From sequence record MK514281.1: DNA of 64,000 nt; one strand, 5' to 3'. Position numbers and translations under genes: made by a program. Below, piece by piece: positions 2,270-53,984 of the stretch (positions are counted from its first letter, which is position 1; each line of letters opens with the position of its first letter). A model generated the notes under the pieces. It was not told where the DNA came from. It saw only the letters and a program-made list of their open reading frames with translations, and searched no databases.

Positions 2270-4192
2270 ATGACAGATAGCACTACAGCGCAGAGCCCGA
2301 CCGTGACGTTAGACCAAGTCATTGCGTCAGGCGGCCAGATTGTCTTCCTGGACAATGGGCAACTGAAAAGCTTTCCTGTCTCTCAGATCACTGACTTACT
2401 GAAAAGCGGCATGTCTACTGACGTGTTGGGTCAGGCTGATTCTCTGAGTATGTTTGGTCAGGTGGAGTCGTTCGAGGCTCTACGTAAGCTTAAGCCACAG
2501 AAAGAAGGTGCACGCATCTCTCTTCGTGGCTGGAACAAAGGCAGTTGTCTGGGTGGCGGTGAGTTCATTGGTCATCTCGTCACCAAAGAGCTTAAAGCCC
2601 GCCCAGATGATGGCGGTATGATTGCAGCCGGCAGCGGGTTCTTCTGGGAACGTGTGTGCTCAGATTGCGGGCAAATGAATGTCACTCACTTCGGTGCGCT
2701 TCCTGGCGCAACTGCAGCGACTGATTGCGTGCCAGCAATGACCGCCATGCTGAACTGGAGTAATGCCAACGCTGTTGGTTTAGGAATTCAATTCCCAGCC
2801 GGTACTTTCTTCGCTTCCAGTTTAAAGTTCACCAAAGAGATCGGGTATTTCCGTATCGCCGGTAACCACATCAACTTTGGTTATTTTGCTAACACGGTAT
2901 TGGTGAGTGACGCTACTGAAAACTTTATGTTGGATGTTGCGGCCCGTCGGGTTGAGTTGGCAAACATCATCTTCCGCGGTGTGAGTACTACTGAGAAGCC
3001 GAATAAGAAAGGGATCTTTAATAACATCGTCATTGGTGGTCAGTACTTCAACATGACCTGTGTGCGGTTTGAGAAAATCGGCGGGACCTGTGTTAATCTG
3101 ATCGATACTCTCGATACCAAGATGACACAATGGTACGCGTCACAATGTACTGGTGATGTGATCGTTAACAAATGGTCCGATCGTCAGGCAGGTGGCTGGA
3201 ACCATACCACTGCTGTTGAAATGACCAACTTTAACATCCAGAAGTGTGTTGGTGGTAAAGTGTTTGACATGCAGCGCTGCGCTCAGTCGTTTATCACTAA
3301 TGGCTGGATCGAGCACTGTGATGACCCAGGTGACCTGTCTAATGGTCAATGGACGGTAAATGGCCTGAGTATCGAAGATTGTAAGAAACCATTGAAGGCC
3401 TCTTACGCTCGCTTTATTGAAATTCAGCGTAACCTGCAGTCCGGGTCACGGATCGACTACTCCATTGACCCAGAGCTCGAAGAGTGGCTGAGTGAATGGG
3501 AACGCGGTCGTCTGGATATCGCCAACCACGGTATCTTCATCGACGGTACCTTAGAGCCGGGTACGATCATGTCTCGCAACAAGCTGAGCAACAGCAGCGA
3601 CAAAGCGAAATGGTTCCGGGTCGGCACCTGGTACAGCCCATCTGAAGGCGACTCCATTGACATCAACTTGGTCGGTACTGGTAACTTCCTGTCGGTCGCA
3701 CCAAAGCTTGATGATATCGATGGCGTGCGTCAAGGTGGCGGTAACACTCTGATCCGTGTGCAGTTGAAGAAAGACTCCGTAGGTGCGACCTTAGAACCAC
3801 ATGGTTCAAGCCCCCTGCAAGCGGCGAAGATTGCCAAAGTCGGTGCCGGTAAGTTTGTGATCTACGCCCAGCTGAAACCGTATACCCGTAATGTGATCCC
3901 GGTGATTGTTGCAACCGGTGCCACGCACTACGAAGCCGGTGTCTCTTATTACTTCCGTCCGGCGATTGCCTCGATGAGTGATGAAGAGATCGCAGCAGTG
4001 CCGGATGCGGTAGTGATTGCTGAACAGTGGTCGCTCGGTCAAATGGCCGGTGTGGGCGCCACTAACGAAGGTAACCTGATGCTGAAGAGTAAGATCGTTA
4101 ACGATCACTTGCAGGTACAGGTCATGGTTAGCCAAGCACAATGGGCGAAACCAGAACTTCGTTATATCGAGCTGAAGAAAGAAGCCAAGTAA
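2270..4192 (+). CDS. amsF: AmsF-like (amylovoran biosynthesis family) beta-helical protein; possible virion EPS-binding or depolymerising protein
   Basis: Motifs GGTCVNLIDTLDTKMTQWYAS, WNHTTAVEMTNFNIQ, GWIEH and DDGG..HFGA match my recollection of Erwinia AmsF; no Tat signal; TATG upstream at about 2209. Confidence 0.8.
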   Translation: MTDSTTAQSPTVTLDQVIASGGQIVFLDNGQLKSFPVSQITDLLKSGMSTDVLGQADSLSMFGQVESFEALRKLKPQKEGARISLRGWNKGSCLGGGEFIGHLVTKELKARPDDGGMIAAGSGFFWERVCSDCGQMNVTHFGALPGATAATDCVPAMTAMLNWSNANAVGLGIQFPAGTFFASSLKFTKEIGYFRIAGNHINFGYFANTVLVSDATENFMLDVAARRVELANIIFRGVSTTEKPNKKGIFNNIVIGGQYFNMTCVRFEKIGGTCVNLIDTLDTKMTQWYASQCTGDVIVNKWSDRQAGGWNHTTAVEMTNFNIQKCVGGKVFDMQRCAQSFITNGWIEHCDDPGDLSNGQWTVNGLSIEDCKKPLKASYARFIEIQRNLQSGSRIDYSIDPELEEWLSEWERGRLDIANHGIFIDGTLEPGTIMSRNKLSNSSDKAKWFRVGTWYSPSEGDSIDINLVGTGNFLSVAPKLDDIDGVRQGGGNTLIRVQLKKDSVGATLEPHGSSPLQAAKIAKVGAGKFVIYAQLKPYTRNVIPVIVATGATHYEAGVSYYFRPAIASMSDEEIAAVPDAVVIAEQWSLGQMAGVGATNEGNLMLKSKIVNDHLQVQVMVSQAQWAKPELRYIELKKEAK

Positions 4193-47163: not shown

Positions 47164-47237
47164 TGAACACCCGTTTTGGTAATTTATTACGTAGTTGATC
47201 AATTATAAGAGAGATATTGTTTATTCGAGGGTGTTTC

Positions 47238-48758
47238 ATGGACAAGTTACCAAGTACCGCACTGCCAAAGGTGTCAATGGTTTTATACACCGATGGCGGT
47301 TGTCGTCAAAACATCGGAGGCTGGGGAATACATGGTTATTCCTGGTTGGTTGAAGACGATGACAAAAAGAAAAAGAAAAAGCCGGCGCGTGACGTTCCGT
47401 CAACGACTGGCTACATTGTAAAAGACGATCCGAAACTCGACAGTCGTGAAGTGGTCAGGCCCCACGAAGTGATTGAAGGGTTTGGTGGGATTTTACCTAA
47501 CACCACGAATAACGTTGCGGAACTCACAGCAACTATTAATGGTATTGACTTAGCACTACAGCAGAACACAGAAAAGCTCCTCGTCATCTCCGATTCCAAA
47601 TATGTCGGCGACAATGCAAAGAATCAATTGCATCGTTGGATGAAAGCCGGCTGGAAGAAAGCGGATGGCGGGGATGTTGCCAACAAAGAGCTGTGGGAAA
47701 CCCTCAGCAGCAAACTTGATGAGCTGAAGTATCGCGGCATCTCGTTTGACATCGAATGGCTGAAAGGGCATGCGGGTCACCGTGGAAATCAGTTCGCTGA
47801 CTACATGGCAACCCGTGGTGTCTTTAAAGGCCGTGTTGGTGACGCTACCCCGTATTATCAGATCCAGGATGCCGGTGAGTACGATAAGTACAAAACTGAA
47901 CGTCCGCGCTTTGTCACGCACTCGCGCTGGTACTTCACGTTACAGACTGAAAAGTTGATGAACAAGAACGAACAGGGCTTGTACGAGTATTGCTTTGGCC
48001 ACCCAAGTAAAGGGGATGCTGATCAGCAGTACTTAGGCAAAGCGTTAGCCGACACCGCCTTTAGTGTGGTGTGGTTGAAAGCACCTGAAGAGTGTTTGGA
48101 TCTGGTTTATTCACGCACCAAAGAGATCGCTACCGATGTTTACGGTAACGCCTTCATTGGTCGCTTGGATAACATTTACAACTCATTCATTCACAAAGAG
48201 ATCATGGACTACGGCGGGTCGTTATTGCAACGTGCGAATAAGTACAACAATGACATCACCAACTGTACCGATGCTCAAGTGGTGCGTGAGTGTAACCCGC
48301 CAGGTATCTCTTACCGGGCACTGTCGAATTTAGGACAGCTTAGTAAGATCCTGAATGAATTTGTCAGCGACAGTTTACCTGCGACAACCAGGGTGGTAGA
48401 GATTACTGACAAAATCTACCAGACCGTGAAAGGTAAGAAAGAAGATAAGCTGGCATTGCTCGGTTCGATTCGTCAAACCGACAAAGCGCTCAAGTTCGAT
48501 GTACCGTGTGATGTACTCGACAAAGCGATCTCCGTCGAAGTTACAGCCACGCTTGGATTGACCTTACCCAACCGTAATACGTTAAACGGTCTTACGGAAC
48601 TCAATCCAAAGGTATACCTGTTCTTGACAAAAGAGTCCGACATTGCATTTCGCTACGGATCGATTGTGGTATGCGATGAAGGGTATTGCATCATGGCCAA
48701 CGTATACGCTGACCTGCGTACGCTGTCAAAAAAGGATCTGGAGCGTTGCGGGCAGTAA
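47238..48758 (+). CDS. rnhA: Ribonuclease HI with C-terminal extension (phiKZ type)
   Basis: LYTDGGCR, TTNNVAEL, SDSKYV, W...GWKK.DG..VANKELW and KGHAGHRGNQFADYMA motifs. Confidence 0.92.
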   Translation: MDKLPSTALPKVSMVLYTDGGCRQNIGGWGIHGYSWLVEDDDKKKKKKPARDVPSTTGYIVKDDPKLDSREVVRPHEVIEGFGGILPNTTNNVAELTATINGIDLALQQNTEKLLVISDSKYVGDNAKNQLHRWMKAGWKKADGGDVANKELWETLSSKLDELKYRGISFDIEWLKGHAGHRGNQFADYMATRGVFKGRVGDATPYYQIQDAGEYDKYKTERPRFVTHSRWYFTLQTEKLMNKNEQGLYEYCFGHPSKGDADQQYLGKALADTAFSVVWLKAPEECLDLVYSRTKEIATDVYGNAFIGRLDNIYNSFIHKEIMDYGGSLLQRANKYNNDITNCTDAQVVRECNPPGISYRALSNLGQLSKILNEFVSDSLPATTRVVEITDKIYQTVKGKKEDKLALLGSIRQTDKALKFDVPCDVLDKAISVEVTATLGLTLPNRNTLNGLTELNPKVYLFLTKESDIAFRYGSIVVCDEGYCIMANVYADLRTLSKKDLERCGQ

Positions 48759-50055: not shown

Positions 50056-51441
50056 ATGTTGTCATTCGGTGAATTTGTTGAGAAGTCACGCCCTATTCGA
50101 CCTTTCTTGAATATCGGCGCGGGCTTTGATATCCCAACCGGTAGCTATCGTTTCGGTAAGCACGGTGAATCTATTCTTAATGGTGGTCTGGCGCCATTCA
50201 TTGCGATTGTTGGTAAAGGCAACACCTTTAAAACAGCGATCGGTTGTTTCATGATGACCCGCGTGCTGGAGCGCTACAATAACTCTAACGGCCTGCACTA
50301 CGATACCGAGTGTACGTTCAGTGCTGATCGTCTTACCAGTCTTACCAGTCGTCTGGGTCCGAATGCTGCTGCAGAGTGGCTGGCCAACGAACGTATCTAC
50401 CTGACTGATGACTCCATCATTAAAGGTAACCAGTGGTTTAAGAAATCGGTGCAGGAATACTCCGAAGCGAAGAAGAAAGCCAAAATGGGTACGCTGCCGT
50501 TTGTGGATAAAGATGGGAACCTGATTCCTTATCCATACCCGACAGTCAACTTTGGCGATTCCATGTCTGAGATGAAATTCGACGATCTGGAAAAGAACTA
50601 CGCCAAGATGGAAATCGGCCAGGGTGAAATGCAAACGGAAGCCATGCGTGTGTCGAATGCCAAACGCATGTTAATCGAAAAGACCCAGGGTTACGCCAAC
50701 GCCGGCGGCATGTATGTCATCATGACAGCGCACTTAGGTAAAGAGCTGAACATGGACGGCAAACCACAAGAGAAGAAAACCACCTTTATGAAACAAGGTG
50801 ACAAAATCTCTAAGGTGCCTTCACAGATCCTCTCTCTGCCAAACAACGCCTGGGAGATCTCTACCGGTACGGTGTTGATTGATAAGAACACCAAAGAGTG
50901 GATGTACCCGAAACAGGGTCGCAATGACGTGGATACCAACGGTAACCCGGACATGATCACTCTGGTGGCGAAGAACCTGCGCGGGAAGAATGGCCCGTCT
51001 GGCGTGCCGTGGGAATTCGTCATGTCACAGTCTGAAGGTCTGCTGCCGTCCCTGACAGAGTTCCATTACATTAAGAACAACGGCCGTTATGGCCTGGGTG
51101 GCAATGACCGTAATTATTATGTTGAATTGTGCCCAGATATCAAGCTGCAGCGCACCACCGTGCGTGATCGCATCGACGACAACCCTGAGTTACGTCGGGC
51201 ATTAGAGATCACCATGGAGATGTGTCAGATGCGTTTCCTGTGGCACACCCGCGATCCAAAGTACAACATGACTCCTCAGGAACTGCGTGAAGGCCTGGAG
51301 AAGAAAGGGTACAAATGGGATCAGCTGCTCAACACCCGTGGGTTCTGGACGTTTGAAGAAGACAACCATCCATTACCATTCTTAAGCACAATGGATCTAC
51401 TCCGCATGTATCATGATGAGTATCGCCCATACTGGCTGTAA
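50056..51441 (+). CDS. uvsX: UvsX/RecA-like recombinase (phiKZ type)
   Basis: Walker A IVGKGNTFKT, HYDTECT, FGDSMSE, VIMTAH and V.KNLRGKNGPSG motifs; terminator at 51456-51485. Confidence 0.85.
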   Translation: MLSFGEFVEKSRPIRPFLNIGAGFDIPTGSYRFGKHGESILNGGLAPFIAIVGKGNTFKTAIGCFMMTRVLERYNNSNGLHYDTECTFSADRLTSLTSRLGPNAAAEWLANERIYLTDDSIIKGNQWFKKSVQEYSEAKKKAKMGTLPFVDKDGNLIPYPYPTVNFGDSMSEMKFDDLEKNYAKMEIGQGEMQTEAMRVSNAKRMLIEKTQGYANAGGMYVIMTAHLGKELNMDGKPQEKKTTFMKQGDKISKVPSQILSLPNNAWEISTGTVLIDKNTKEWMYPKQGRNDVDTNGNPDMITLVAKNLRGKNGPSGVPWEFVMSQSEGLLPSLTEFHYIKNNGRYGLGGNDRNYYVELCPDIKLQRTTVRDRIDDNPELRRALEITMEMCQMRFLWHTRDPKYNMTPQELREGLEKKGYKWDQLLNTRGFWTFEEDNHPLPFLSTMDLLRMYHDEYRPYWL

Positions 51442-51521
51442 GTGTACCCACTGTGGGAGAGGGATAACCCTCTCCTTCTTATACCGTCAGTAGAGGGAAA
51501 TAAGCTAATAGGAAGCAGTAT

Positions 51522-51941
51522 ATGCTTAACAAAGAAATACGCATTGTCGTTGCGTCGACTAAAGGTTTCAACGACGCAGAGCGTTTAAAACTGACTATTG
51601 ACGGCCTCCTGGAAGATATCTACTACCTCAACGAAGGGGTAGGTGATGAGGACGAGGAGTTGATCACTGATGCCAAGATAGTTTTCATCACCAATGGCGA
51701 ACACAAAACAGCGGCTGAGTTGCTGCCTGGTGTGTTGGGTGATCGGAACATCGACATCGAAGTGATCAAGGTTGATTGGTCAAAAGGTAAGAAAGCGTTT
51801 TTTGATAACTGCGCTGTATTGGGTGCGAAGTCGACCCACGGCGTCATTTTTACGGACAGCAAAGATGACGGGATGCAGACACTGCTGAAAGCATGTCTCG
51901 ATGCCGGCTCACGCGTTCGTACTTATAGCTCTGCTATTTGA
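51522..51941 (+). CDS. SLOG/YspA-like protein (degenerate)
   Basis: RIVVASTKGFNDAE, VDWSKGKKAFFDNC..LG and GVIFTDSKDDGM..LL parallel the SLOG domain of 52432-53313. Confidence 0.6.
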   Translation: MLNKEIRIVVASTKGFNDAERLKLTIDGLLEDIYYLNEGVGDEDEELITDAKIVFITNGEHKTAAELLPGVLGDRNIDIEVIKVDWSKGKKAFFDNCAVLGAKSTHGVIFTDSKDDGMQTLLKACLDAGSRVRTYSSAI

Positions 51942-51955
51942 GAAAGGTAACCCCC

Positions 51956-52402
51956 ATGATAGCCTCAGAAGCTCACGTTAGTATACTTGACGTTAATGTC
52001 ACCCACGTTATATGCACAGTTAATTGCGAAGGGCATATGGGTCGTGGCATAGCCTTGTATCTGCGTAAGTGTATTCCGGGGCTATATGAGCGGTATAAAC
52101 ACCTGTGCAGTTTAGGGATCATCACGGTAGACAAACTCTGGATCTACCCATCACACCCCCGTCAGATTCTCTGCTTTCCAACCAAAGATAAAACCTGGGA
52201 AGACAGCAAGCTTGAATGGATCGAAGCCAATCTCATAAAGCTTCGTGACAACTACAAAACAAAAGGCATTGTCTCTGTGGCGATGCCTCCTCTTGGATGT
52301 GGAAACGGTAACCTAAAGTGGGATGAGGTGCGGAGCCTCATTTATGCCATCTTGGGTGATTGTGACCTTGAAGTCCACATCTGTTTAGGTAAACCGAAGT
52401 GA
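51956..52402 (+). CDS. DarG-like macro domain (ADP-ribosyl hydrolase)
   Basis: TVNCEGHMGRGIA, ILCFPTK, SKLEWIE and SVAMPPLGCGNGNLKWDEV motifs. Confidence 0.88.
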   Translation: MIASEAHVSILDVNVTHVICTVNCEGHMGRGIALYLRKCIPGLYERYKHLCSLGIITVDKLWIYPSHPRQILCFPTKDKTWEDSKLEWIEANLIKLRDNYKTKGIVSVAMPPLGCGNGNLKWDEVRSLIYAILGDCDLEVHICLGKPK

Positions 52403-52431
52403 GGGAAACACCCTGAATAGGAGCCAGTATT

Positions 52432-53313
52432 ATGTCTGATAACGCACACGTTTTACCCGATCCACGCGAAGATGGCAAGACGCACATCAACGTCTATAGC
52501 CGTGGCGCTTCCTGGTTAGGGCAGCAACTTTCTAATATGTCCTACTACGACTTCGCACATCCACGCTACGGTGTGTTCGCCTCGTTGGAGGGCTTCTGGT
52601 ATTGGTTGTCTACGGGCAAGCAACACGAGGAGTTACGGAAGCTTGCCGGGGTCAAAGCGAAAATGACCGGCCGGGAGTTCGAGACGATCCCAAATGAAAA
52701 CTTTGAAGAAGAGTTCAAAGAAGCCATGCGTCTGCGTCTGGAGCAACACCCGATCATCGCCAATGCCCTGGCTGAATCGTTACTGCCGTTAAAGCACTAC
52801 TATTGTTACGGCGGGAAAGTGGTCGACTTGTATGACCGTCACAAATGGCAGATGGACTTCTACGAGGAGTGGCGTAAAGCCAACGCCCCCGAAGACACCA
52901 CGTTGGTGCTGTTGATCTCTGGCTCGCGTAAAGAGAAAGACTACGACGCCTTTAAGCACATCGTGATGACCTACCTGCAGCCGTATATCGACAAGATAAA
53001 GGACACGTACAAAATCACCCTGCTTTCGGGGCTCGCCTGGGAAGGTCCCGATGACATGGCAATTCGTCTGTGTCGGGAAGAAGGCTTCATGTTGATTGGT
53101 CTGCCGGCTAAGTGGAAAGAGCAAGGTAAAGCCGCGGGCATGATCCGCAATGGTGCCATGGGGCGGTTGTGTAACAAGGCTCTGGTGTTCTGGGATGGCG
53201 AATCACCGGGGACAAAAGGGATGATTGATTACCTGAAGAAAAATACTATAGACCATCTTGTGTATTTACACGGTAAACATGAACCTGACTGGAAAGCCCC
53301 GGAGACATCATGA
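52432..53313 (+). CDS. NADAR (T4 gp30.3-like) domain fused to a SLOG/YspA domain
   Basis: N-half LSN...F...FASLEGFWYWL..LR.LAG..AK..GR; C-half LISGSR, SGLA.GPD, AAGMIRN and VFWDGESPGTKGMI. Confidence 0.75.
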   Translation: MSDNAHVLPDPREDGKTHINVYSRGASWLGQQLSNMSYYDFAHPRYGVFASLEGFWYWLSTGKQHEELRKLAGVKAKMTGREFETIPNENFEEEFKEAMRLRLEQHPIIANALAESLLPLKHYYCYGGKVVDLYDRHKWQMDFYEEWRKANAPEDTTLVLLISGSRKEKDYDAFKHIVMTYLQPYIDKIKDTYKITLLSGLAWEGPDDMAIRLCREEGFMLIGLPAKWKEQGKAAGMIRNGAMGRLCNKALVFWDGESPGTKGMIDYLKKNTIDHLVYLHGKHEPDWKAPETS

Positions 53314-53984
53314 CCCCAGCACGCGAACAGACCCAGCAATTTGTGATCGAGGCTATTGCTGAGATTCTACCCGGTTCTAAGAACCGGGATATCTATATCG
53401 ACTTCTTCTCGCGGTTGAGCGATGAGGCGTTTGATGCCCTGATGCAGCGGATGGATGAAGACCAGGAGATCTTCCCCTTCTACCATCCGAACTTTACCGG
53501 TACGGTAATTGATGTTGAACGTGTGATCAAGTTAATTGAAAAGCACGGCGACACCATCATGGAGCAGCTCTGGGATATCGACCCGGAAACCGGACTGCAG
53601 TACCTGACCCCATTGAAGTATCCGGTGCTGTTACTTCCGCTGCGTATTCAGCAGCAGAAGCTGCAGAAGAAGATGTCGATTCCAAAAGACAACAACCACA
53701 TCGACGATCTGACTAACCAGCCCACCACCGAATCCAAAGGTGCTTCTTTGTCTTACCCGGAAGTGCAGATCATCTATGCCATGGGTGGTGACAAGATCCT
53801 GGAAGAGACCATGAAGGTCCGTGGTGGTGATGAGAAGGCGTTTCGTGATTACAATAACGAAATCATTGCAAGCGGCGGTGTCACCATTGGTGCAATCAGC
53901 AGCAGCAAGACCAAGGTGAAGTCCACCAAAACCGTGCAAGTGATTCTTGAGGCCATGCACCTGAGCAACAACCTGGCCAGTTAA
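53310..53984 (+). CDS. Virion RNA polymerase beta subunit, C-terminal piece (phiKZ gp149-like)
   Basis: DPETG...TP..YPV..LP.R.QQQKL.KK..IP, LTNQPT.ESKG..LSYPEVQ and MKVRGGD motifs. Confidence 0.8.
   Translation: MTPAREQTQQFVIEAIAEILPGSKNRDIYIDFFSRLSDEAFDALMQRMDEDQEIFPFYHPNFTGTVIDVERVIKLIEKHGDTIMEQLWDIDPETGLQYLTPLKYPVLLLPLRIQQQKLQKKMSIPKDNNHIDDLTNQPTTESKGASLSYPEVQIIYAMGGDKILEETMKVRGGDEKAFRDYNNEIIASGGVTIGAISSSKTKVKSTKTVQVILEAMHLSNNLAS

What the first reader, a model, noticed from the sequence alone, without database searches (positions are those of the whole stretch)
51522..53313. Three-gene ADP-ribose reversal cluster: SLOG, DarG-like macro domain, NADAR-SLOG fusion
Seen: three consecutive genes sit between uvsX and a vRNAP subunit. 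They encode a degenerate SLOG/YspA protein, a macro domain with the DarG-type FPTK lysine and PPLGCGNG loop, and a T4 gp30.3-like NADAR fused to an intact SLOG domain. Established: DarG macro domains remove thymidine-ADPr made by DarT2, NADARs remove guanine-ADPr made by DarT1, and SLOG domains bind nucleotides or NAD derivatives. Inference: one locus may counter both DarTG1 and DarTG2 defence. The SLOG modules could sense or recycle ADPr/NAD, and that combination is the unusual part.
Basis: partly seen in the sequence, partly recalled or inferred. Interest (0 to 1): 0.72.

Follow-up and report, generated by a model that had tools for sequence, protein, structure and literature searches.

The report
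Phage DNA ADP-ribose eraser gene cluster

Summary
The window is Erwinia phage Rebecca/Special G, a nucleus-forming jumbo phage of the RAY/Ea35-70 group. Three co-directional genes lie between uvsX and a virion RNA polymerase beta piece.

- Gene B is a DarG-type macrodomain. It keeps the catalytic Lys (FPTK), the Asn and the Gly loop, and is 34% identical to PhiKZ gp104 (AdfM), a proven anti-DarTG2 enzyme.
- The N-half of gene C models confidently (pLDDT 96.8) as a NADAR fold. It is homologous to the T4 gp30.3/AdfN family (hhalign 97.3%) and shares the phage-type His. It lacks the phosphate-binding Lys of tested NADARs (Ser60 instead).
- The C-half of gene C is an intact YAcAr/DprA-like SLOG domain.
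- Gene A is a diverged SLOG paralogue without the family motifs.

Relatives hold the same slot with Macro-NADAR-SLOG as one protein, with Macro-SLOG, or with Macro-NADAR plus NADAR-SLOG, so the parts work together. RAY gp153, 99% identical to C, was shown to sit in the phage nucleus but was published as "DprA".

Best reading: a nuclear DNA de-ADP-ribosylation (anti-DarT) module. Macro/NADAR/SLOG combinations in jumbo phages were catalogued in 2021-22, and AdfM and AdfN were characterised in 2025-26. Novelty is therefore modest. What the SLOG modules do remains open.

The parts
50056..51441 (+). UvsX-like recombinase (context; upstream boundary of the conserved slot)
   Evidence: phrog_97 UvsX-like recombinase 1.8e-56; RAY gp150, nuclear-localised
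51522..51941 (+). Gene A: diverged SLOG-like paralogue, 139 aa (RAY gp151). The canonical GSR, SGxAxGxD, AGxxRN and DGxSxGT motifs are replaced, but the protein is strongly conserved within its own small family.
   Evidence: hhalign A5 vs SLOG family A4 prob 97.5%, E 6.7e-12. phrog_289 1.6e-6. Orthologue in pEa_SNUABM_48 hits Pfam YAcAr at 3.4e-5. Motif comparison. AF2 model weak (pLDDT 66.8) with only generic Rossmann-like matches. Found in only 21 phage records; in the five arrangements inspected it lies directly after uvsX and before the macro gene.
51956..52402 (+). Gene B: DarG-type macrodomain, AdfM homologue, 148 aa (the mechanical ORF call starts at TTG 51938). Key residues: Asn23 (TVN), Lys77 (FPTK), Gly loop 111-118.
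   Evidence: Pfam Macro 1.2e-9 above cutoff; NCBIfam DarG 1.4e-37 over profile 8-145; PADLOC DarG 1e-40; PDB 5m3i/5m31 DarG macrodomains; 34% identity and E 2e-21 to PhiKZ gp104 with Asn23 aligned; start and RBS
52432..52896 (+). Gene C, N-terminal domain (aa 1-155): NADAR fold, gp30.3-like phage clade. Glu53, Lys77, Gly80, Arg81 and the signature His122 are present; Ser60 replaces the canonical phosphate-binding Lys.
   Evidence: AF2 pLDDT 96.8. Foldseek PDB: YbiA 2b3w TM 0.65, NADAR 8bau TM 0.61. BFVD: many viral NADAR proteins. hhalign to gp30.3 family 97.3%. Residue columns. phrog_652 2.1e-35. No Pfam NADAR hit.
52903..53313 (+). Gene C, C-terminal domain (about aa 158-283, plus tail): intact YAcAr/DprA-like SLOG domain with SGSR, SGLAWEGPDD, AAGMIRN and WDGESPGT motifs.
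   Evidence: Pfam YAcAr 1.3e-4 (22.1 bits, below the 28.2 cutoff); phrog_289 1.1e-20; all 12 invariant family columns present; profile hits DprA structures 3uqz 2e-4 and 4ljk 4e-3; whole protein 99% identical to nuclear-localised RAY gp153
53310..53984 (+). Virion RNA polymerase beta-subunit piece (context; downstream boundary). Its ATG overlaps the stop codon of gene C (ATGA).
   Evidence: phrog_3233 1.7e-99; overlap seen

Best explanation
The cluster is a DNA de-ADP-ribosylation (anti-DarT type) counter-defence module of a nucleus-forming jumbo phage.

- Gene B is the Agricanvirus counterpart of AdfM. It is a stand-alone DarG2-type macrodomain that removes ADP-ribose placed on thymine in single-stranded DNA by DarT2-type toxins.
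- The NADAR domain of gene C belongs to a large, Pfam-invisible sister clade of T4 gp30.3/AdfN. It most likely cleaves the N-glycosidic ADP-ribose-base bond on another base: guanine as made by DarT1, or possibly cytosine.
- The SLOG domain fused to it is an accessory module. It either binds the substrate (ssDNA or the ADP-ribose moiety) or the released ADP-ribose.
- Gene A is a diverged SLOG paralogue that probably pairs with or regulates that module.
- The proteins act inside the phage nucleus on replicating phage DNA.

What is shown: the domain identities, the conserved catalytic residues of B, the fusion of the domains in relatives, and (in RAY) the nuclear localisation of C. What is inferred: the substrates, the role of SLOG, and any A-C interaction.
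For: - B is DarG-like by four independent searches and keeps the catalytic Lys, the Asn and the Gly loop.
- B aligns over 131 residues with PhiKZ gp104/AdfM. That enzyme removes DarT2 marks and protects PhiKZ from DarTG2 (PMC13309987).
- The N-half of C has a NADAR fold with high confidence. It is homologous to the gp30.3 family, with the Glu and the phage-type His aligned.
- Three unrelated phage NADARs all reverse DarT1 (PMC11825919).
- Rosetta-stone evidence: the same uvsX-to-vRNAP slot holds Macro-NADAR-SLOG as one 429-aa protein in pEa_SNUABM_48, Macro-SLOG in Proteus phage 10, and Macro-NADAR plus NADAR-SLOG in SA002.
- RAY gp153, 99% identical to C, co-localises with phage DNA in the nucleus.
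- Other fusion partners of this NADAR clade are DNA- or ADPr-related: BRCT, DUF4326, DprA-type SLOG.
- DarTG occurs in E. amylovora, though rarely.
Against: - No activity was measured for any of the three proteins.
- The NADAR clade mostly lacks the Lys (P. nicotianae K50 / E. coli C7 K95) that is essential for efficient guanine-ADPr hydrolysis. The window has Ser60.
- Neither the Pfam NADAR model nor the Phage_30_3 model detects the domain.
- DarTG is rare in the known host.
- Iyer et al. argue that most phage Macro/NADAR/SLOG proteins target soluble ADPr derivatives rather than DNA adducts.
- The SLOG role and the role of gene A are guesses. The model of A is low confidence.
Confidence: 0.6

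Rival explanations
1. Soluble-signal interference. The Macro, NADAR and SLOG domains bind or degrade low-molecular-weight NAD-derived immune signals or toxins, such as cyclic ADPR isomers from Thoeris-type TIR systems or ADPr-1''-phosphate, rather than DNA adducts. The SLOG domains would be the ligand sensor or sponge.
For: This is the published prediction for phage Macro/NADAR/SLOG combinations (Iyer et al. 2021 and 2022). SLOG domains of ThsA bind cyclic ADPR (cited abstracts). The loss of the canonical phosphate-binding Lys in the NADAR could reflect a different ligand.
Against: The macrodomain is specifically DarG-type, and its PhiKZ homologue acts on DNA. The RAY orthologue of C sits with phage DNA in the nucleus, whereas such signals act in the cytoplasm. 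Fusion partners include BRCT and DprA-type domains.
Confidence: 0.17
2. Recombination mediator. Gene C (and perhaps A) is a DprA-like ssDNA-binding protein that helps load the neighbouring UvsX recombinase, as published for RAY gp153. The ADPr-hydrolase domains would be secondary.
For: RAY gp153 is annotated as DprA and grouped with recombination proteins. The SLOG profile's best solved relatives are DprA Rossmann domains (3uqz at 2e-4). The genes sit directly after uvsX in all five arrangements inspected. 7 of 80 relatives hit Pfam DNA_processg_A.
Against: The window protein hits YAcAr and not DNA_processg_A in Pfam. Half of the protein is a NADAR fold that the DprA annotation overlooked. In relatives the SLOG domain is fused to a DarG-type macrodomain. 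No other Pfam domain is detected in C; DprA's usual flanking domains, which I know only from memory, were not searched for by fold.
Confidence: 0.12
3. Housekeeping NAD/ADPr or RNA-repair clean-up. The enzymes process by-products such as Appr-1''-p from tRNA repair or free ADP-ribose, which is the old 'phosphatase / Appr-1-p processing' annotation.
For: Database annotations call B a 'putative phosphatase' or 'Appr-1-p processing' protein. Iyer et al. note that some phage Macro/NADAR proteins associate with RNA repair.
Against: B scores far better against DarG than against the ADP-ribose-binding/Appr-1-p type model (1.4e-37 vs 0.021). No RNA-ligase or Tpt1 neighbours are present in the slot. 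The RAY orthologue of C is nuclear.
Confidence: 0.06

Closest known systems
AdfM (PhiKZ gp104), chimallivirus DarG2-like macrodomain anti-DarTG2 factor (PMC13309987)
   Same: Gene B is a stand-alone DarG-type macrodomain in a nucleus-forming phage. It is 34% identical over 131 aa (E 2e-21), with the mutated Asn23, the FPTK Lys and the Gly loop conserved.
   Different: In this lineage the macro gene always sits beside, or is fused to, a SLOG domain and usually a NADAR. The PhiKZ gp104 neighbours show no SLOG family. Activity and localisation of B itself are untested.
DarG antitoxin macrodomain (T. aquaticus / M. tuberculosis, PDB 5m31, 5m3i)
   Same: These are the best solved relatives, and the catalytic Lys (Taq K80) aligns with the FPTK Lys. 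NCBIfam DarG matches over profile positions 8-145.
   Different: B lacks the C-terminal DarT-binding domain and scores 129.7 bits against the 250-bit cutoff for the full-length equivalog. No DarT gene lies within the surveyed 48-57 kb stretch; the rest of the window was not scanned for proteins.
AdfN (T4 gp30.3, Pfam PF08010), phage NADAR anti-DarTG1 factor (PMC11825919, PMC11125620)
   Same: The two share a NADAR fold and profile-profile homology (97.3%, 134 columns). The LSN motif, the Glu and the phage-specific His in the last-strand region all align.
   Different: It is a separate clade. BLASTP gives only 29% over 59 aa, and there is no PF08010 or PF08719 hit. The gp30.3 Lys43 column is Ser/Ala in most members. 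The domain is frequently fused to SLOG or DUF4326. No member of this clade has been tested, as far as I found.
Macro / NADAR / YAcAr-SLOG / DUF4326 architectures of jumbo phages (Iyer, Burroughs, Anantharaman, Aravind 2021 and 2022)
   Same: This is exactly the domain vocabulary and the kind of fusion or neighbourhood described there.
   Different: Those papers predict action on soluble ADPr signals. Here the DarG-type identity of the macro, the AdfM/AdfN experiments and the nuclear localisation point to DNA adducts. I could not confirm that this specific locus is among their examples, because no supplement is held.
DprA / Smf Rossmann-fold (SLOG) domain
   Same: The C-terminal domain of C shares the GSR, SGxAxGxD and RN motifs, and its profile hits DprA structures. 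RAY gp153 is published as DprA.
   Different: Pfam places it in YAcAr rather than DNA_processg_A. The N-terminal half is a NADAR, and no other Pfam domain is detected in C.

Membership tests
DarG-type macrodomain / AdfM | Macro fold recognised above the curated threshold | tested here: met
   Pfam PF01661 38.6 bits vs cutoff 22
DarG-type macrodomain / AdfM | Closest to DarG among macrodomain classes | tested here: met
   NCBIfam DarG 1.4e-37 vs 0.021 for the next model; PADLOC DarG 1e-40; top PDB hits are DarG macrodomains
DarG-type macrodomain / AdfM | Catalytic Lys (Taq DarG K80), the Asn mutated in PhiKZ AdfM (N23A) and the Gly-rich loop | tested here: met
   Lys77 in FPTK, Asn23 in TVN and PPLGCGNG at 111-118, all aligned; positions; K80 role from PMC11543638
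DarG antitoxin (full-length, toxin-linked) | C-terminal DarT-binding domain and adjacent darT gene | tested here: not met
   Only profile positions 8-145 of 338 match, and the score is below the 250-bit cutoff. No ART gene among the neighbours surveyed at 48-57 kb. B is an orphan macrodomain like AdfM, not a DarG.
DarG-type macrodomain / AdfM | Hydrolysis of thymine-linked ADP-ribose on ssDNA; protection from DarTG2; nuclear import | not testable with these tools
   Shown only for PhiKZ (activity, protection) and for PhiKZ, PhiPA3 and Asesino (localisation)
NADAR superfamily | NADAR (YbiA-like) alpha+beta fold | tested here: met
   AF2 pLDDT 96.8, pTM 0.90. Foldseek: 2b3w E 6.4e-4, TM 0.65; 8bau TM 0.61; 8bat. 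No other fold below E 3.5. BFVD lists many NADAR proteins.
NADAR superfamily | Recognised by curated sequence models (Pfam PF08719 NADAR or PF08010 Phage_30_3) | tested here: not met
   No hit at E<=1. A profile of 73 relatives reaches NADAR 8bau only at E 0.43.
Phage NADAR clade (gp30.3 / AdfN) | Homology to the gp30.3 family with His replacing the Glu/Asp of the last-strand catalytic position | tested here: met
   hhalign 97.3%, E 2.4e-11. His122 (72/73 in its family) aligns with invariant His123 of gp30.3. The His signature is described in PMC11543638 and PMC11125620.
NADAR superfamily | Conserved Glu (Pn E43 / Ec C7 E88) and phosphate-binding Lys (Pn K50 / Ec C7 K95) | tested here: inconclusive
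   The Glu is present and invariant (E53). The Lys position is Ser60 in the window and S31/A26/K12 across 73 relatives, in two independent alignments. K95 is essential in E. coli C7 NADAR.
Phage NADAR clade (gp30.3 / AdfN) | Removal of guanine-linked ADP-ribose; protection from DarTG1 | not testable with these tools
   Shown for T4, Bas32 and Bas60 NADARs only
SLOG superfamily, YAcAr family (C-terminal half of C) | Pfam PF10686 match and the family's invariant Gly/Arg/Asp/Asn/Ser motifs | tested here: met
   Its own score is 22.1 bits, below the 28.2 cutoff. But 27 of 80 multidomain relatives match, up to 9.6e-13 (P0018 43.1 bits). All 12 invariant columns are present. DprA structures are hit at 2e-4. 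No fold model was made of this half.
SLOG superfamily (gene A) | Homology to SLOG domains, the family motifs, and a SLOG fold | tested here: inconclusive
   Homology is supported by hhalign 97.5%, phrog_289 1.6e-6 and the orthologue's YAcAr hit at 3.4e-5. The motifs are absent. The model has pLDDT 66.8 and gives only generic Rossmann-like matches; YpsA ranks 17th.
DprA recombination mediator | Pfam DNA_processg_A match | tested here: not met
   No DNA_processg_A hit for C at E<=1. The N-terminal 155 aa are a NADAR. Whether DprA's usual flanking domains are present was not tested by fold.

The most novel reading that the evidence does not exclude
The two SLOG modules (gene A plus the C-terminal domain of C) form a substrate-recognition or regulatory unit. 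This unit binds ssDNA or the ADP-ribose moiety and hands DNA adducts to two base-specific erasers inside the phage nucleus. The Lys-less NADAR clade (about 1,400 cluster representatives, unseen by Pfam) would have a substrate other than DarT1-type guanine-ADPr, for example another base or an undiscovered host DNA modification. That would define a broad-spectrum DNA ADP-ribose eraser with a new accessory mechanism.
Probability: 0.2. Interest if true: 0.7.

Novelty: new variant of a known kind. Interest (0 to 1): 0.42.

Why it matters
If the reading is right, Agricanvirus phages carry erasers for two chemically different DNA ADP-ribose marks side by side, and relatives carry them in a single polypeptide. 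This would extend the AdfM finding, that the phage nucleus needs enzymatic back-up, to a second enzyme class.

It also corrects a published annotation: RAY gp153 'DprA' is a NADAR-SLOG protein. It flags a very large NADAR clade that standard domain models miss and that no one has assayed. The constant SLOG partner gives a concrete handle on what viral YAcAr SLOG domains do, which is unresolved. These phages are also candidates for fire-blight biocontrol, so knowing which host defences they can neutralise has practical use.

Tried and rejected
- Pfam and NCBIfam gave no NADAR hit for C.
- phmmer of C and of A against PDB sequences found nothing meaningful.
- A 73-sequence profile of the N-domain reached NADAR 8bau only at E 0.43, behind chance collagen hits. 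The NADAR call therefore rests on the fold model and on hhalign.
- Direct BLASTP of the N-domain against T4 gp30.3 is marginal (E 0.003 over 59 aa).
- The word-indexed protein search found only 10 relatives. The exhaustive search was needed and found 1,419.
I rebuilt the alignment without that row. The resulting model was low confidence, and its fold matches are generic Rossmann-like proteins, so I do not use it as evidence for SLOG.
- No supplement text is held for Iyer et al. 2022, so I could not check whether this locus is one of their listed examples.
- A literature search for 'YAcAr' returned only Caiman yacare papers.
- Simple read-through joining B and C was considered and rejected. They are in different frames and are separated by 29 nt carrying an RBS.
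- No tRNA or Rfam element occurs anywhere in the window.
- The promoter-like count in the region equals the shuffled expectation.
Full report
**Identity of the window and the genes.** The 2-kb region is 100% identical to Erwinia phage Rebecca and Special G. It is 98-99% identical to RAY, Ea35-70 and the other Agricanvirus jumbo phages. These are nucleus-forming chimalliviruses (PMC10299810).

Three co-directional, tightly packed ORFs lie at the reported coordinates. I call them A (51522-51941), B (51938-52402) and C (52432-53313). A and C have clear AGGA-type ribosome-binding sites. For B, the mechanical TTG start at 51938 is probably wrong. An ATG at 51956 follows a GAAAGG site and matches the RAY gp152 annotation, giving 148 aa. 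The stop codon of C overlaps the ATG of the next gene.

**Gene B.**
- Pfam Macro is above threshold.
- NCBIfam's DarG equivalog matches at 1.4e-37, but only over its macrodomain part (profile 8-145 of 338), so the score is below the full-length cutoff.
- PADLOC DarG matches at 1e-40.
- The best solved relatives are the M. tuberculosis and T. aquaticus DarG macrodomains (1e-22 and 8.5e-21). The FPTK lysine aligns with the DarG catalytic lysine, and the PPLGxGNGGL loop is conserved (K80 role in PMC11543638).
- B is 34% identical (E 2e-21) to PhiKZ gp104, and its Asn23 aligns with the Asn23 whose mutation weakens PhiKZ AdfM.
- AdfM was shown in 2026 to remove DarT2 marks from DNA, to rescue DarT2 toxicity, to be imported into the phage nucleus and to protect PhiKZ from DarTG2. 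Macrodomains of this type were reported in about half of chimalliviruses.

B is therefore a new member of a characterised family.

**Gene C, N-terminal half.**
- An exhaustive search found a large family: 1,419 cluster representatives at E<=0.001.
- With a 73-sequence alignment, AlphaFold2 gave a very confident model (pLDDT 96.8, pTM 0.90).
- Foldseek against the PDB returned one match at E<=0.001, the NADAR protein E. coli YbiA (E 6.4e-4, TM 0.65). Phytophthora NADAR with ADP-ribose (E 2.9e-3, TM 0.61) and Geobacter NADAR (E 0.21) ranked next, and everything else had E above 3.
- The viral structure library gave dozens of annotated NADAR proteins.
- A profile-profile comparison with 49 members of the T4 gp30.3 family (Pfam PF08010) gave 97.3% probability, E 2.4e-11, over 134 columns. 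The LSN motif, the invariant Glu (E53) and the invariant His (H122 vs gp30.3 H123) are all aligned.
- That His is the published signature of phage NADARs, replacing the Glu of YbiA and the Asp of DarT1-linked NADARs.

'gp30.3-like NADAR' is therefore correct.

One difference matters. The phosphate-binding lysine (K50 in Phytophthora, K95 in E. coli C7) is essential for efficient guanine-ADPr hydrolysis and nearly invariant in gp30.3. It aligns with Ser60 here. In this clade the column is Ser 31, Ala 26 and Lys 12 of 73. Lys77, Gly80 and Arg81 are kept; they correspond to K75, G78 and R79 by my reading of the alignment together with the residue roles given. Activity is therefore likely but not assured, and the substrate could differ.

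**Gene C, C-terminal half, and gene A.**
- The C-terminal half hits Pfam YAcAr (a YpsA-related SLOG family) at 1.3e-4, which is below the curated cutoff.
- 27 of the 80 multidomain members among the top 150 NADAR-family hits carry YAcAr, up to 9.6e-13.
- In an alignment of 28 such domains the window sequence has every invariant residue, within the GSR, SGxAxGxD, W, AGxxRN and DGxSxGT motifs.
- A profile of the domain finds DprA Rossmann domains among solved structures (3uqz at 2e-4). This explains the old 'DprA-like' label.
- Gene A is homologous to this domain family (hhalign 97.5%, E 6.7e-12; phrog_289 1.6e-6; orthologue YAcAr 3.4e-5).
- A has none of those motifs. It carries its own strongly conserved set instead. 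'Degenerate' should therefore be read as 'diverged and still under selection'.
- The structure model of A was poor (pLDDT 66.8) and matched only generic Rossmann-like folds, so it adds nothing.

**Comparative context.** This is the most informative new evidence. The slot between uvsX and the RNA polymerase gene holds the same domain set in different packaging across relatives.

| Phage or sequence | Arrangement |
|---|---|
| Window / RAY | A, Macro, NADAR-SLOG |
| AH06 | the same, plus two small inserted ORFs |
| pEa_SNUABM_48 | A, then one 429-aa Macro-NADAR-SLOG protein |
| Salmonella phage SA002 | A, Macro-NADAR, NADAR-SLOG |
| Proteus phage 10 | A, Macro-SLOG, no NADAR |
| Metagenomic relative P0015 | GIY-YIG/I-TevI-type endonuclease domains between Macro and NADAR |

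Macro and SLOG are the constant partners, and NADAR is usual but optional. Gene A occurs in only 21 phage records. These belong to the five arrangements above, and in each one inspected A lies directly upstream of the macro gene. Such fusions argue strongly that the domains act in one process.

**Where it acts.** RAY gp153 is 99% identical to C. As a GFP fusion it co-localised with phage DNA in the nucleus. It was one of only two non-core proteins to do so, and it was interpreted as a DprA recombination protein. AdfM homologues of PhiKZ, PhiPA3 and Asesino are also nuclear. This favours DNA adducts over cytoplasmic small-molecule signals as the target.

**Interpretation.** I consider a nuclear DNA de-ADP-ribosylation module the best explanation (about 0.6).
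- B as a thymine-ADPr eraser is well grounded.
- C's NADAR as a guanine (or other base) ADPr eraser is plausible. It rests on homology and on the fact that three unrelated phage NADARs all reverse DarT1. The missing lysine tempers it.
- The SLOG role is open. Binding of ssDNA (DprA-like), of ADP-ribose on the adduct, or of released ADP-ribose are all compatible. A may pair with the SLOG domain.

The rivals are as follows.
- Degradation or sequestration of soluble ADPr-derived signals, as Iyer et al. predicted for such architectures.
- A genuine DprA-like recombination mediator working with UvsX.
- Housekeeping ADPr or RNA-repair clean-up.

DarTG is present but rare in E. amylovora genomes. This neither supports nor excludes the main reading.

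**Novelty.** The parts are known kinds. AdfM was described in 2026 and AdfN in 2025. The co-occurrence and fusion of Macro, NADAR, YAcAr-SLOG and DUF4326 in jumbo phages was described in 2021 and 2022.

What is new here is modest but concrete:
- the re-annotation of RAY gp153 as NADAR-SLOG;
- the recognition of a very large, untested, Pfam-invisible NADAR clade that lacks the canonical lysine;
- the series of fused and split forms in one syntenic slot;
- the pairing of an AdfM-type and an AdfN-type enzyme in a nucleus-forming phage.

I rate it a new variant of a known kind, with interest about 0.42.

Noticed in passing
window 51938-51958: The mechanical ORF call starts gene B at TTG 51938, overlapping the stop codon of gene A. 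An ATG at 51956 preceded by GAAAGG is the more likely start and matches the RAY gp152 annotation (148 aa).
   Followed up: yes
window 51459-51474: A short G+C-rich hairpin with a T-rich tail lies just after the uvsX stop and before gene A. It is terminator-like by a simple scan, and such sites are only about twice the shuffled expectation in this region.
   Followed up: no
window 53310-53313: The stop codon of gene C overlaps the start of the virion RNA polymerase beta piece (ATGA). This suggests translational coupling of an accessory counter-defence gene to a core gene.
   Followed up: no
L001 (Erwinia phage AH06) 4009-4356 and 5241-5525: AH06 has two extra small ORFs inserted into the cluster. 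One of 115 aa with no family match lies between the macro gene and NADAR-SLOG. One of 94 aa (phrog_625, annotated 'RNA binding protein') lies after NADAR-SLOG.
   Followed up: partly
L007 (Salmonella phage SA002) 3427-5303: The NADAR domain is present twice in tandem, as Macro-NADAR (290 aa) followed by NADAR-SLOG (326 aa), and the two copies are nearly the same sequence. It looks like a duplication that split a fused Macro-NADAR-SLOG gene, or an assembly artefact.
   Followed up: partly
protein P0015 (683 aa, metagenomic relative): GIY-YIG and I-TevI-type DNA-binding domains (a homing-endonuclease module) sit between the Macro and NADAR-SLOG parts of one predicted protein. Mobile endonuclease insertion may be how the fused gene gets split.
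   Followed up: no
proteins P0012, P0013 and alignment A2: Beyond SLOG, the same NADAR clade is fused to BRCT domains, to DUF4326 (26 of 80 multidomain members) and to DUF488. These are a DNA- and ADPr-oriented set of partners.
   Followed up: partly
L006 (RAY) 2533-3414; BFVD entry A0A173GE06: RAY gp153 is named 'DprA-like protein' in GenBank, UniProt and the RAY paper. The name overlooks that its N-terminal 155 residues are a NADAR domain.
   Followed up: yes
window 47217-48758: A 513-aa protein has an N-terminal RNase H domain (Pfam 3.8e-25) and a roughly 300-aa C-terminal extension of unknown function. It is conserved as phrog_3265 and sits at the same position in all relatives inspected.
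   Followed up: no
window 1-64000: No tRNA genes and no Rfam family at gathering threshold occur anywhere in the 64-kb window.
   Followed up: yes
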